DNA of 64,000 bases from Magallana gigas (taxonomy: Eukaryota): the NCBI RefSeq assembly GCF_963853765.1, contig NC_088860.1, positions 23,684,001 through 23,748,000 of the forward strand, read 5' to 3'. Numbering within the stretch: position 1 is the first letter of the stretch; every line of letters starts with the position of its first letter. Below the pieces are notes generated by a model. That model was not told the origin of the DNA. It saw nothing but the letters and a program-made list of their open reading frames with translations, and searched no databases. The translations under genes and the position numbers were made by a program. Of this stretch, positions 18,311 to 22,438 are shown piece by piece.

Positions 18311-18594
18311 ATGGGAGATTCGTACGAGCCATATCTACAGACTAGCGATATTCAGGATCTGACCGCCCCTCGGCTAGGGAGCTTACTTTCCAGCGGGTTT
18401 TATGGTAAAATTTGACTTTAAACTTGTATTTCTTATACCGTAACGTCTAACGTCGATAAAAAGATCAATCTGATAAACTCATAAAAATGTTGTGTCGTAA
18501 CGTTATCTCTTAGAAATTAACAGTAAATTATTAAGCTTTCGTAACAAGATAACTATAAAATATTAGAAACACGCTCTTTTTCTGTAATTTTTGT

Positions 18595-18629
<35 letters not shown>

Positions 18630-21600
18630 TTTTTGCAATCCAACATATTGACACATATAATTTTATACAGGATAAATTATATAGGATTTAAATGTAAACA
18701 TGGCGTATTTTTTTTATGTTCAACATTAATCTAAAAAATACCTCATTTACACAGACATATAACTTTTCAGCAGAATACAAAAATACAATCGCGGTAGATT
18801 CATTCATTTCCGACTCCACTGTAAAGCATTTGTAATTTTTTTGTGGCACAAAAAAAAATTACAATTGCTTTGAAAAATGATTTAAATTTTGAACAATCAA
18901 CAACAAAATGGAATAATGTTGAATTATTCCCGCAGACGACTCATATGAAGGAGACCGCCAAGAAGTACCTACTGAGAGCGGAAAAGCGTTACCTCTAGCA
19001 GGCAAGCATTTAGAAAGTTCTATTTTGACAAGCAAGAATAAATGTACTGAAGAATAAAGAAGTATGCATAATAAGAATAAAAGCGAGATACATTGACTTT
19101 TGGCGGTAATTACCTTGCATAAAAAAGACCAAACAAAAATCGGTATTGGTTTCTTTTGGGTAATTAATATGTTGATTAATGTCATATCAACCAAACCTAA
19201 TTTGGCAATGGCAATACATGTGGTCAATTCGAAAAATTCCTTTTTATAATTAAGTCAACTTCATTTAGCATCAGTAGAAATAATCTATATGATCCTAAAG
19301 ACGCAAGGAAGATTCTTGCCTATGCATTTAAATAAGAAAAATATTAGCAATTTGTTTAAGGATGGGAAACACAAAAGTAGTTTAACTCTTGTGACCACCT
19401 TGCCATATAATTTGATAACTTTTTTTTACAACAGAGGATGTCATCGTGCGTCGAAATTACATTCTCCTTAAAGACGAACTGTCAGTGGGGTGGATCCACG
19501 ATTTTCTGCTTCAGCACGAGGTCCTCTCCCAGCGTGACCTTGAGGACATTTATAGCGGACTCAGACCGAGGCATGTTCAGGTGGACATACTACTGAAACT
19601 TCTGCTTCGTCACGGGAGGTCCGCCTGTAGCAAGCTTATCCAGATTTTACCGGATTGTGGATATAGTCATATTCTCGATGTGTTTCACGAAACAATAAAT
19701 TTTAAAACCAAAGAAGGTAAAATACGACAATACTCCAAAAATGTTTCATTGTTTCCGAGACAATCGTCACATGCGCATCACTACTTTAAAAACGATCAAG
19801 GCGAAACATCAGGGACTATTGACAATATTCGTTATAAAAGAATTCGCTATAATCGTGTTCGATATAATAGTGTTTACTGTATTTCACACAAGTCTGATAC
19901 TAGTGTATATATTTTATGATTTTAGACTGGATGAAATACCAATCAGAAATCCGAGTTCATCAAATAGAAATGGAACACTCCTTCCTCTCCAAAACCATTG
20001 AGCCAGTGTCAACGGCCGACTTCGTTCTGCAGGAGCTCGAAGCAGACGCCTATTCCATTGATGACCACGACCAAGTCATGAACGAGGTCTCAAAATCGAG
20101 GCAGTCCAGAGTCCTCCTCAGACAGGTCGTGAACTATGATGGCGTAGTTTTGAACTGTTTTCTCTGCGCAGTTGATCAGATCCGACACATTTTACCCGGA
20201 ACCTCCATTATTAAACGTTTAGAAAACGCAAACCTAGCAAAGGGTTCGTGAATTATGTGTTCAACAAATCATTGTTTTCGCATTTTCTCCAGTGTATATT
20301 TTGATAATTTGCTGAATATGTAATATCAAGAACTGCACAGTTTAATAATTATGTAGTGTATAAACGTTATACATGTACATGCATTGACCTGTCATTGTTG
20401 TTCCACAGGTAATGGTCGCAAAAAAGTCGGCGTCTATTTCCAAGACGAACACCTAGTGACAGTCGTTGATCGTAAGACAATCTTTAGTTTAAGATCCTCA
20501 AAACATGTGTATATAGCAATTGCACTTAACTAATCTATTCAGTGAGTAATATTGTTGCTGCTGGAACACAGTTTTGTTTACTTTTAGTTAACTATGATGA
20601 TGAACGCAGAGACCACGTGATCATACTCAAATTTGGAAATCAAAAGAAGCGGGCAACACAGGAGCTAGAGAATGTCTTAGTGCGCAGAATCCAAAGTGTG
20701 GACACCGAGATCGACGAGCTAGCCAACAGATTCATGCATATGAGCATCCAGGATGGTCAAGCAGGGTCCGTGGTTATTTACATGAAAGCTCTGACCGACA
20801 GTGCGGCAGAAAACCTGGACAAACATCATCTCAAAGCGTTCATACAGAAGGTCCTCCAAGACCCGGAAGTGAGCAGACTGCTTCCGGTCGGAACCTTTAA
20901 TATCCAGGTGGAAACCATCACAAGTGGATTTGTCCAAGGTTCCTTTCTTGTACAATTCTTTCGAAGATTTGAGCTGACCATCCATGATTTTTTATATTTA
21001 CTATTGGTTTTTTTTCCTCTTCAGAAGAGGTATGGAAGATAGACCGAGACTCTCTGACAGAAATACTGACAGACAACAGACCAATGCTAGAGGACGAGTT
21101 GGAACCTTTCTGCTTCCTTCAGCGCTTTCAACAAGACCAGATATTCTCTCAGGATGAGATAGAATCCATTCGGAAGCACGGCAGCAGACGATACAGAGCT
21201 AACGAATTCCTGCGGCTCTTACAGGCCAAAGGAGACCCAGCGATGGAGGTGTTCATGGATGAGATGAGGAGGAGAGGGGATTCTTACATGTTACGACAAC
21301 TTATCCCCTCATCCCCGTCAACCCAGTGCAAAGGTAAACCTGAAAATGCGAGATTCACTACAAAAACATGCACGGCACTCATTCCATGAGCTTTTATTAA
21401 AGATATTCTAAACGCATTAATTATATGATAATTGATTAAACCTTCAAGCCAAATAAGACAGAGTTAGCAATTCTCAAAACGTATAAATTTTATTTTATCA
21501 ATTTATTTTAAAAAAAAATCCATTTTCCTAAATCGAGCGAGAGTTGCCTGAACATTGTTGTGCATCTTGCATTAGATTCGAGTAAAATTGTTAATTTTTA

Positions 21601-22438
21601 TATTTTGAGTGCATATACACGTATTATATCCCTTGTGGATTGACAGAGTGTTTGCGGGGAGCCATTCTAGACAACTACGAGGGTATCCGTGACGAGATAG
21701 ACGTAAGGGTGACGGACTACACGGACCCACCCTGTCACTCTGCCCATGCACTGTACAAGGACAGCAGCGAGAGGTACAGGTCCCCGCAGGCTCTCCTCAA
21801 GCACGTGCTGGAGTGCGACATGGCCCTGATGCGATTCCTCAAGGTCATCAGGTCAACGCCGATAGCTAAGCTTACCCAGTCTGACTGTACTTGTCAAGGT
21901 AGATTCAAAAATATCAGGTGAATCAAAGGTGTATTGCTTGGACATTAGGTATACTCATTTTTAACACTTTTTTTTGCATTAGGTTTTAGGGAATTGACAA
22001 CCCGGATCCAAAGAAAGAAACGCATCTACAACTTTAGAATTTCCTCAGTGTTGATGAAAGGCAAGTTCTTCATCCCTTTACACATGATCATGGTTTGCAA
22101 CTTACATATTACAAAGTATTTTTAAAACATTGTGTCATAAAGAAAATTTGACCCCTATCATTGACCTTGACCCAATACCGACCTTTTACTAGCCTTAGAA
22201 TTAAGTATTGATTATTCAAACAAATATAAAGTTACAAGATAGAAATAGTAAATAAGTTTAATATTTACTATTTCTATCTTGTAACTTTATATTTATATAA
22301 AGCTGTAGATGCGTTTCTTTTAAAAATATAATTCTTCTTGCAGATAATCCACACCAGAAGGAGCAGTTGGTCAAAGATGTTTTACCAGCACACACGGGAA
22401 GATCCCCACATACACACAGTATGTGCCCAAATAATTAA
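18311..22438 (+). CDS. Multi-CARD death-fold protein with a central TRADD-N-like domain (613 aa)
   Basis: Nine exons: 18311-18404, 19435-19716, 19926-20243, 20409-20471, 20588-20938, 21025-21333, 21647-21898, 21983-22060 (GC donor), 22344-22438; total 1842 nt, open throughout. CARD-like patterns: IVRRNYILLKDEL...VDILLKLL; LSKTIEP...SRVLLRQV; LTDNRPMLEDELEP...RANEFLRLL; ILDNYEGIRDEI...QALLKHV. First and last exon choices are less certain than the core. Confidence 0.8.

What the first reader, a model, noticed from the sequence alone, without database searches (positions are those of the whole stretch)
18311..22438. CARD-CARD-(TRADD-N-like)-CARD-CARD scaffold with no enzymatic or NACHT domain
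Seen: four ~85-105-aa helical exons with CARD-like hydrophobic spacing flank a 117-aa alpha/beta exon containing IQDGQAGSVVIYMKALTDSAAENL. That segment resembles the GS-V-I motif of TRADD-N-like domains found in invertebrate death-fold proteins. No caspase QACxG, P-loop or LRR is present. Established: CARDs nucleate homotypic filaments and vertebrate TRADD-N binds TRAF2. Inference: a single-chain signalosome hub linking several CARD partners to TRAF/NF-kB or cell-death signalling, or a decoy. I do not know this architecture from the literature; it is the best candidate here for an undescribed system.
Basis: partly seen in the sequence, partly recalled or inferred. Interest (0 to 1): 0.8.

Follow-up and report, generated by a model that had tools for sequence, protein, structure and literature searches.

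The report
Oyster four-CARD adaptor with TRADD-N-like core
This is a real, expressed Pacific-oyster gene for a non-enzymatic docking protein (two CARD death-fold domains, a small TRADD-N-like alpha/beta domain, then two more CARD-type domains); it belongs to an oyster-specific family whose domain layout is already listed in the supplement of a 2021 paper, so it is a new member of a known kind, not an undescribed system.

Summary
The gene is real. Its true model has 11 exons (18311-22687, + strand) and all ten introns are phase 1. The 686-aa product is identical to Magallana gigas XP_065926464.1, an "uncharacterized protein". RNA contigs from three runs confirm every splice junction, so it is one gene.

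It read through the donor at 22418 and missed exons 9 and 11.

- **Exons 3 and 7:** CARDs by Pfam.
- **Exon 4:** a divergent CARD, matched in 4 of 6 orthologues.
- **Exon 8:** a shortened CARD-derived domain with eight invariant Cys/His.
- **Exon 6:** folds as a ferredoxin/RRM-like beta-alpha-beta-beta-alpha-beta sandwich. It carries an invariant Gly-Ser in the beta2-beta3 turn, the published TRADD-N signature. Pfam TRADD models, hhalign and fold searches do not single out TRADD-N.

Iterated searches find 14 intact copies of this exon in the genome, most next to CARD exons. One copy, beside ATP-synt_F, has the same five-domain layout. It matches C. virginica LOC111100011, which Kaur et al. [quoted passage not shown]

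No enzymatic domain is present. The most likely role is a death-fold scaffold or regulator; partners are unknown. Another first-reader note (s1-381003) flags a similar gene elsewhere in this genome.

The parts
18218..18310 (+). 5' UTR (minimum extent)
   Evidence: RNA contigs start at 18218-18239 and run into exon 1 (table 8).
18311..18404 (+). Exon 1, aa 1-31. Start codon; acidic, disordered N-terminus.
   Evidence: GT donor. Junction 18404|18936 is seen in 3 runs. pLDDT about 30.
18936..19001 (+). Exon 2, aa 32-53. Disordered, followed by a GC donor.
   Evidence: Junction 19001|19435 is in 3 runs. The exon is absent from the old model K1QZT7.
19435..19716 (+). Exon 3, aa 54-147: CARD1
   Evidence: Pfam PF00619, E 1.3e-7, 32 bits against a cut-off of 23.9. 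hhalign against exon 7 gives 94.8%. AF2 shows a helical bundle with pLDDT 75-89.
19926..20243 (+). Exon 4, aa 148-253: CARD2 (divergent)
   Evidence: The M. gigas sequence itself has no Pfam hit. CARD is hit in 4 of 6 orthologues, best E 2e-7. The profile's top PDB hits are Apaf-1 CARD at E 0.06. AF2 helices have pLDDT 71-88.
20409..20471 (+). Exon 5, aa 254-274: conserved short peptide or linker
   Evidence: 57-81% identical across Ostreidae, but pLDDT is 33-38. No function assigned.
20588..20938 (+). Exon 6, aa 275-391: TRADD-N-like alpha/beta domain (RRM/ferredoxin-like)
21025..21333 (+). Exon 7, aa 392-494: CARD3
   Evidence: Pfam PF00619, E 1.4e-10, 41.5 bits. pLDDT 81-91.
21647..21898 (+). 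Exon 8, aa 495-578: CARD-derived helical domain with invariant Cys/His
   Evidence: No Pfam or PDB sequence hit. It aligns end to end with the ordinary CARD-like fifth exon of a paralogue, E 9e-4. The Atlas model has TM 0.69 to a mollusc CARD cluster. Eight invariant Cys/His: C493, C496, C524, H525, H547, C551, C575, C577. pLDDT 48-63.
21983..22060 (+). Exon 9, aa 579-604: conserved basic segment, followed by a GC donor
   Evidence: Junctions 21898|21983 and 22060|22344 are seen in RNA contigs. 58-77% conserved.
22344..22418 (+). Exon 10, aa 605-629: disordered tail
Evidence: Junction 22418|22515 is in 3 runs.
22515..22687 (+). Exon 11, aa 630-686 plus stop: basic disordered tail
   Evidence: The tail (aa 579-686) has 26 K/R against 7 D/E. 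An alternative NAGNAG acceptor lies at 22518.
22688..22800 (+). 3' UTR (minimum extent)
   Evidence: RNA contigs run to and past 22799.

Best explanation
**What it is.** The window holds the single-copy M. gigas gene for a 686-aa soluble, non-enzymatic death-fold adaptor. Its parts, in order:
- an acidic disordered N-terminus;
- tandem CARD1-CARD2;
- a short conserved linker;
- a TRADD-N-like RRM-fold domain with the Gly-Ser turn;
- CARD3;
- a shortened CARD-derived domain with eight invariant Cys/His;
- a basic disordered tail.

Each domain is one phase-1/phase-1 exon.

**Family.** It belongs to an oyster lineage-specific family with 14 intact central-domain exons in this genome, most flanked by CARD exons. 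Kaur et al. 2021 classed this family as the DEDD2 clade of TRADD-N.

**How it likely works (inferred, not shown).**
- The CARDs make homotypic CARD-CARD contacts. The two tandem pairs could seed or cap CARD oligomers of CARD-bearing caspases, RLR/MAVS-type or BCL10-type proteins.
- The exposed beta-sheet of the central domain binds a non-death-fold partner, as TRADD-N binds the TRAF2 MATH domain.
- The protein would therefore bridge or gate death-fold assemblies without catalysing anything itself.
For: **Gene model.**
- The spliced product equals P0027 / XP_065926464.1 exactly.
- All junctions are seen in RNA contigs and reads.
- Logan transcript contigs of about 2.2 kb encode the full 686-aa orthologue.

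**CARDs.**
- Pfam and hhalign support them.
- The full-length AF2 model hits Apaf-1, caspase-9, NOD1 and CARD8 CARDs (TM by target 0.72-0.83) and the RIG-I 2CARD.

**Central domain.**
- The fold is RRM/ferredoxin-like.
- The Gly-Ser turn is invariant.
- ESM Atlas feature score is 0.90 with 203/256 shared features to clusters carrying PF20694; structure TM is 0.60.

**Family.**
- Iterated profile searches of the genome converge on 14 intact exons plus one broken one. This equals the '14-16 copies' given for Crassostrea.
- CARD exons flank most copies.

**Paralogue.**
- The copy at C5:42.378-42.381 Mb has CARD, CARD, this domain, CARD, CARD in separate exons, just downstream of ATP-synt_F.
- Its central exon was reached from the window's family at E 5.7e-7 before it was added to the profile.

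**Conservation.**
- Full-length orthologues are found only in Ostreidae.
- The central domain and exon 8 are the best-conserved parts, at 62-77% identity.
Against: **Homology to bona fide TRADD-N is not shown by any test run here.**
- Pfam PF09034 and PF20694 give no hit on this domain or on 11 paralogous exons.
- They do not ring at this locus in whole-genome scans.
- hhalign of the 17-sequence family profile against two PF20694-positive oyster exons gives 0.4% and 2%.
- The profile finds no TRADD chain in the PDB.
- Fold searches return generic ferredoxin-like proteins, not TRADD.

**Other gaps.**
- The window's own gene and its direct orthologues are not in the held part of the Kaur table.
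- The link rests on a paralogue whose orthology to LOC111100011 is inferred from synteny and layout only.
- No partner is known.
- There are no TRAF-binding peptide motifs in the disordered tails.
- No paper mentions the locus.
Confidence: 0.7

Rival explanations
1. The central exon is an RRM/ACT/ferredoxin-like domain unrelated to TRADD-N. It could be a small-molecule or nucleic-acid binding module, and the Gly-Ser turn would be convergent. The protein would then be a multi-CARD adaptor with a sensor-like core rather than a TRAF-type docking core.
Against: - Gly-Ser in the beta2-beta3 turn are the only invariant columns across nine diverged sequences, which is the published TRADD-N signature.
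- ESM feature neighbours are TRADD-like_N, NCOA6_TRADD-N, DEDD-type and TRADD clusters, not ACT or ABM.
- The domain is obligately fused to death-fold domains, as in TRADD and DEDD2.
- The same-layout paralogue is classed as TRADD-N by specialists using transitive profile searches.
Confidence: 0.15
2. The anatomy is the same but the role is negative. It would be a CARD-only-protein-like decoy that caps or sequesters CARD filaments and dampens caspase or NF-kB signalling, instead of nucleating them.
For: - There is no effector domain.
- CARD2 and exon 8 are degenerate relative to the Pfam CARD model.
- Vertebrate CARD-only proteins act this way (established knowledge).
Against: Nothing here separates activator from inhibitor. 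All five domains are under clear constraint across Ostreidae, which fits either role.
Confidence: 0.12
3. The region is two genes (an N-terminal 2CARD gene and a downstream TRADD-N/CARD gene), or a mis-joined or decaying locus.
For: Older gene models differ in length and exon content (638-686 aa).
Against: - RNA contigs bridge exons 1-5 and exons 6-8, and every junction is seen.
- Single ~2.2-kb transcript contigs encode the whole 686-aa orthologue.
- The frame is open throughout and all introns are phase 1.
- The differences between old models are exactly the two exons with GC donors.
Confidence: 0.02

Closest known systems
[quoted passage not shown] 2021, eLife 10:e70394, Figure 4-source data 1
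   Same: Same five-domain order. Its M. gigas counterpart (C5:42.378-42.381 Mb) has the same one-domain-per-exon structure. Both belong to the same oyster family of central domains.
   Different: - It is a paralogue, not the orthologue. The window's C. virginica orthologue is LOC111100879.
- The central exons share only about 17% identity.
- The paralogue's fifth domain is an ordinary CARD-like exon without the Cys/His set.
- It lies next to ATP-synt_F. The window's gene lies among housekeeping genes.
Vertebrate TRADD (TRADD-N + Death domain; PDB 1F3V with TRAF2)
   Same: Both have an alpha/beta RRM-like domain with a Gly/Ser turn between beta2 and beta3, joined to death-fold domains in a non-enzymatic adaptor.
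   Different: The window's protein has CARDs instead of a Death domain and four of them instead of one. There is no Pfam TRADD_N match, and TRAF binding is not shown.
DEDD / DEDD2 (DED + TRADD-N-like domain; nucleolar)
   Same: The published clade assignment of the oyster family is 'DEDD2 clade'. Both have a death-fold domain N-terminal to the alpha/beta domain and basic segments.
   Different: The window's protein has CARD rather than DED, and extra C-terminal CARDs. The one strong PF20694-positive exon in this genome (C2:699331) is not retrieved by the window family's profile.
Tandem CARDs of RIG-I/MDA5 and NOD2
   Same: Two adjacent CARDs. The top Foldseek row for the full model is the RIG-I 2CARD.
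   Different: The match is weak (E 0.03, TM by target 0.41, rmsd 13.7). There is no helicase or NACHT, and the tandem unit occurs twice.
CARD-only proteins (ICEBERG/CARD16-18)
   Same: Death-fold proteins without an effector domain. They are possible regulators of CARD filaments.
   Different: Those are single ~90-aa CARDs of primates. This is a 686-aa five-domain protein.

Membership tests
CARD (Pfam PF00619) | Match to the family HMM above the gathering score | tested here: met
   - Exon 3: 32 bits. Exon 7: 41.5 bits. The cut-off is 23.9.
- Exon 4: no hit in M. gigas, but a hit in 4 of 6 orthologues, best E 2e-7.
- Exon 8: no hit in any orthologue.
CARD (Pfam PF00619) | Six-helix death-fold bundle | tested here: met
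   - In the AF2 full-length model, aa 54-139, 146-235 and 401-484 are helical bundles with pLDDT 70-91.
- Foldseek hits Apaf-1, caspase-9, NOD1 and CARD8 CARDs at TM by target 0.72-0.83. The tool does not say which CARD of the model matched.
- Exon 8 has only four clear helices at pLDDT 48-63, which is inconclusive.
CARD (Pfam PF00619) | Homotypic CARD-CARD binding or filament formation | not testable with these tools
   Needs co-IP, speck or filament assays.
TRADD-N superfamily (Kaur et al. 2021; Pfam PF09034, PF20694, PF13820) | Two-layer RRM-like alpha+beta sandwich with a four-stranded antiparallel sheet | tested here: met
   Both models give beta-alpha-beta-beta-alpha-alpha-beta. Ferredoxin-like folds are the best matches. 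The fold alone is not specific.
TRADD-N superfamily (Kaur et al. 2021; Pfam PF09034, PF20694, PF13820) | Conserved 'uS' (tiny residue + Ser) motif in the beta2-beta3 turn | tested here: met
   Gly334-Ser335 lie between strands 326-332 and 336-342. G and S are the only invariant columns in the 9-sequence alignment and are kept in 14 of 17 family exons. The definition comes from PMC8195603.
TRADD-N superfamily (Kaur et al. 2021; Pfam PF09034, PF20694, PF13820) | Sequence match to a curated TRADD-N model | tested here: not met
   There is no PF09034, PF20694 or PF13820 hit at E up to 10 on the domain, its orthologues or 11 paralogous exons. Genome scans with PF09034 and PF20694 do not ring at this locus.
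TRADD-N superfamily (Kaur et al. 2021; Pfam PF09034, PF20694, PF13820) | Profile-profile or transitive link to accepted members | tested here: inconclusive
   - hhalign against PF20694-positive exons gives 0.4% and 2%.
- The PDB profile search finds no TRADD.
- The iterated search reaches the exon of the gene that matches LOC111100011, published as TRADDN-DEDD2, at E 5.7e-7.
- ESM Atlas neighbours carry PF20694.
TRADD-N superfamily (Kaur et al. 2021; Pfam PF09034, PF20694, PF13820) | Fusion to Death-like superfamily domains in one polypeptide | tested here: met
   CARDs lie on both sides in this gene and in most paralogues.
TRADD-N superfamily (Kaur et al. 2021; Pfam PF09034, PF20694, PF13820) | Binding of a partner such as the TRAF MATH domain through the sheet face | not testable with these tools
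   The one complex job, against an oyster TRAF2/3-like MATH exon, ended with no verdict. It counts neither way.

The most novel reading that the evidence does not exclude
In the Ostreidae lineage of this gene, the fifth domain would be a CARD remodelled into a metal-binding module. It has eight invariant Cys/His (CxxC...CH...HxxxC...CxC), enough for two zinc sites, on a bundle that has lost most of helices 2-3. That would be a kind of death-fold domain not described before. It would give a four-CARD/TRADD-N hub a redox- or zinc-dependent switch.
Probability: 0.2. Interest if true: 0.55.

Novelty: new member of a known kind. Interest (0 to 1): 0.35.

Why it matters
Oysters have no adaptive immunity and have greatly expanded death-fold and TRADD-N gene families, and almost none of these genes has been studied at the bench. 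This gene has several practical advantages as an entry point to that family:
- it is single-copy;
- it is conserved across Ostreidae;
- it is clearly expressed;
- it has a clean one-domain-per-exon build;
- it now has a corrected gene model, including two GC-AG introns that older annotations missed.

It is not a new system. The architecture is already catalogued, so its value is as a tractable representative. The Cys/His-rich fifth domain adds a possible further point of interest.

Tried and rejected
- **Short-query homologue search.** The first search with the 116-aa exon found only genomic ORF fragments, because of the length window.
- **Library-wide search.** The HMMER search of the 1.84-billion-protein library with the central domain gave 6 hits. 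One of them, P0010 (3406 aa, nine stretches), is a sum of 2-8-bit matches to a repetitive adhesin-like protein. It vanishes with the wider profile, so it is a false positive.
- **Pfam TRADD models.** PF09034 and PF20694 gave no hit on the domain or its paralogues.
- **hhalign.** The family profile against two PF20694-positive oyster exons was not significant. Trying to widen the PF20694-positive set from exon L001 found only L001 itself.
- **PDB profile searches.** No hit for the central domain or exon 8.
- **Fold searches.** The central-domain model was searched against PDB (Foldseek, VIA wide, VIA second look), AFDB Swiss-Prot and the ESM Atlas. Only generic ferredoxin-like matches came back; TRADD and DEDD2 were not listed. 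That model has pLDDT 63.
- **Exon 8 comparisons.** hhalign of exon 8 against exons 4 and 7 was not significant.
- **Complex prediction.** The central domain against an oyster TRAF2/3-like MATH exon gave no verdict (score 0.01). This is not evidence either way.
- **Motif scans.** No TRAF2 or TRAF6 peptide motif, K[KR]x[KR] basic-cluster (NLS-type) motif, RHIM or DxxD site was found in the disordered parts.
- **Published table.** The window's gene and its direct orthologues were searched for by accession in the Kaur supplement and not found. The file is truncated in the library.
- **Literature.** Searches by locus names and by 'TRADD-N' plus 'oyster' found no functional work.
- **Source of distant exons.** The source species of the two distant exon-sized homologues P0009 and P0011 could not be learned.
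- **Rfam.** Nothing above threshold in 17000-24000.
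Full report
**What is in the sequence**

The region 18311-22687 on the + strand is a spliced animal gene. I rebuilt the exons by hand and checked them against relatives. This gives 11 coding exons:

| Exon | Coordinates |
|---|---|
| 1 | 18311-18404 |
| 2 | 18936-19001 |
| 3 | 19435-19716 |
| 4 | 19926-20243 |
| 5 | 20409-20471 |
| 6 | 20588-20938 |
| 7 | 21025-21333 |
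| 8 | 21647-21898 |
| 9 | 21983-22060 |
| 10 | 22344-22418 |
| 11 | 22515-22687 |

- All ten introns are in phase 1. Two of them start with GC instead of GT.
- The 686-aa product is identical, residue for residue, to P0027 = XP_065926464.1, 'uncharacterized protein [Magallana gigas]'.
- The window is G000:C8:23684001-23748000 of a 564-Mb assembly.
Its end (22438) comes from reading through the donor at 22418, and it missed exons 9 and 11.
- Older C. gigas models (K1QZT7, XP_011422773.1) lack one or both of the exons that precede the GC donors.

**Expression and unity of the gene**

- I laid RNA-derived contigs of three runs from three studies, plus raw poly-A reads of a fourth run, on 18200-22800. 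They show every one of the ten junctions at the predicted positions, including both GC-AG introns.
- One contig bridges exons 1 to 5 and another bridges exons 6 to 8.
- In the stranded library the first mates lie on the - strand, as expected for a + strand mRNA.
- Logan contigs of about 2.2 kb encode full-length 684-689-aa orthologues.

**The helical exons**

- **Exons 3 and 7** match Pfam CARD above the gathering score (E 1.3e-7 and 1.4e-10). They match each other by hhalign at 94.8%.
- **Exon 4** has no Pfam hit in the M. gigas sequence. It is called CARD in 4 of 6 orthologues (best E 2e-7). Its profile's best PDB hits are Apaf-1 CARD (E 0.06).
- **The full-length AlphaFold model** used 20 rows: orthologues plus paralogous central exons.
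  - It gives helical bundles with pLDDT 70-91 for these three domains.
  - Foldseek returns Apaf-1, caspase-9, NOD1 and CARD8 CARDs (TM by target 0.72-0.83). Its first row is the RIG-I tandem CARD, weakly.
- **Exon 8** is different.
  - It has no Pfam hit in any orthologue and no PDB hit.
  - hhalign to exons 4 or 7 is not significant. pLDDT is only 48-63.
  - It occupies the place of an ordinary CARD-like fifth exon in two paralogues and aligns with one of them over its whole length (E 9e-4).
  - The Atlas model of this part has TM 0.69 to a mollusc CARD-protein cluster.
  - It is the best-conserved domain of the protein (65-77% to the other genera).
  - It carries eight Cys/His that are invariant in all eight orthologues: C493, C496, C524, H525, H547, C551, C575 and C577. 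The paralogues lack them.
  - I read it as a shortened, CARD-derived domain that may have gained a metal site. This is inference.

**The central exon**

- Two AlphaFold runs agree on the order beta-alpha-beta-beta-alpha-alpha-beta. pLDDT was 63 with five close sequences and 62-80 with the wider alignment.
- Kaur et al. 2021 (PMC8195603) define TRADD-N as an RRM-like sandwich with a conserved 'tiny residue + Ser' motif in the beta2-beta3 turn. In the TRADD-TRAF2 crystal, the Ser of that motif contacts TRAF2.
- Here Gly334-Ser335 lie exactly in that turn. They are the only invariant columns in an alignment of nine sequences down to 18% identity.
- The ESM Atlas places the domain next to clusters that carry TRADD-like_N, NCOA6_TRADD-N, DED+TRADD-like_N and TRADD_N. 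The feature score is 0.90 with 203 of 256 features shared, and the structure TM is 0.60.
- Against this, every direct sequence test failed:
  - there is no Pfam TRADD hit on this domain or on eleven paralogous exons;
  - hhalign against two PF20694-positive oyster exons gives 0.4% and 2%;
  - the PDB profile search finds no TRADD hit.
- Membership is therefore likely but not shown here.

**The family and the literature**

- Full-length relatives exist only in oysters: Crassostrea/Magallana, Saccostrea and Ostrea. All are annotated 'uncharacterized' or 'CARD domain-containing'.
- Only six hits came from 1.84 billion representative proteins.
- Iterated profile searches of the window's own genome converge on 14 intact copies of the central exon plus one broken copy. 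Most have CARD exons within 1.5 kb.
- This equals the '14-16 copies' of DEDD2-clade TRADD-N that Kaur et al. report for Crassostrea.
- Their Figure 4-source data 1 lists these layouts:
[quoted passage not shown]
- In M. gigas the only ATP-synt_F exons lie at C5:42.386-42.392 Mb.
  - Directly downstream on the same strand lies a gene with CARD, CARD, family exon, CARD and CARD in five separate exons.
  - That gene is thus the likely counterpart of LOC111100011.
  - Its central exon was retrieved from the window's family at E 5.7e-7 before it was put into the profile.
- The window's own gene and its orthologue LOC111100879 are not in the part of the table that the library holds.
- The architecture is therefore catalogued for a paralogue. 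This gene appears to be an unlisted member.
- No paper mentions the locus.
- Another first-reader note in this scan (s1-381003) flags a CARD plus TRADD-N-like gene elsewhere in this genome. That fits the family picture but is not evidence.

**How it most likely works**

- *Shown:* a soluble protein with no hydrophobic segment. It has no caspase, P-loop or LRR motif and no Pfam domain other than CARD. The N-terminus is acidic and the tail is basic, and both are disordered.
- *Inferred from what CARDs and TRADD-N do in vertebrates:*
  - the CARDs dock on other CARD proteins, and the two tandem units could seed or cap oligomers;
  - the sheet face of the central domain binds a non-death-fold partner such as a TRAF;
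  - the protein bridges or gates assemblies.
- Whether it activates or dampens signalling cannot be told from sequence.
- The single complex prediction, against an oyster TRAF2/3-like MATH exon, gave no verdict.
- The uniform phase-1 exons, one per domain, together with the CARD1-CARD3 similarity, fit assembly by exon shuffling or duplication.

**Verdict**

The claim of an undescribed architecture is not supported. This is a new member of a known, oyster-specific CARD/TRADD-N family. The unexplained points are the Cys/His-rich fifth domain and the conserved 21-residue exon 5.

Noticed in passing
window 19002-19434 and 22061-22343: Two of the ten introns use GC donors. Both are confirmed by RNA contigs. 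Older C. gigas gene models (K1QZT7, XP_011422773.1) lack one or both of the exons in front of them.
   Followed up: yes
window 19026-19121 (intron 2): A ~96-nt stretch has 5-10 times the RNA-contig depth of the exons, with loose ends on both sides. It is probably a dispersed repeat transcribed from other loci.
   Followed up: no
window 22215-22301 (intron 9): An inverted repeat with 40-nt arms, 93% complementary and 7 nt apart. It looks like a MITE-like hairpin.
   Followed up: partly
window 22515/22518: An alternative NAGNAG acceptor of the last exon is seen in one RNA contig. It would add or drop one codon.
   Followed up: no
window 20409-20471 (exon 5): This 21-codon exon is highly conserved across oysters but is modelled as a disordered linker. 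Its function is unknown.
   Followed up: partly
window 23101-23268 (-): The last exon of an MCM-binding-protein gene (Pfam MCM_bind, E 2e-6) converges on the 3' end of the CARD gene.
   Followed up: partly
window 29642-30037 (+) and 44612-44971 (+): A Der1/rhomboid-like exon and an RCC1-repeat exon. The neighbourhood is housekeeping genes, not an immune cluster.
   Followed up: partly
window 12487-12630: A run of 144 N (assembly gap or mask). It was left untouched.
   Followed up: no
G000:C5:42385787-42386209 and 42391294-42391716: The ATP-synt_F (V-ATPase subunit F) exons occur twice, 5.5 kb apart, with identical scores. They lie just upstream of the CARD-CARD-TRADDN-CARD-CARD paralogue.
   Followed up: partly
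G000:C5:12982985-12983310: A broken copy of the TRADD-N-like exon. It is split into two frames and has a TAA stop.
   Followed up: no
G000:C1:34.9-37.3 Mb and C2:43.37-43.46 Mb: Clusters of seven and three TRADD-N-like exons, each with CARD exons beside them. These look like tandem expansions of the family.
   Followed up: partly
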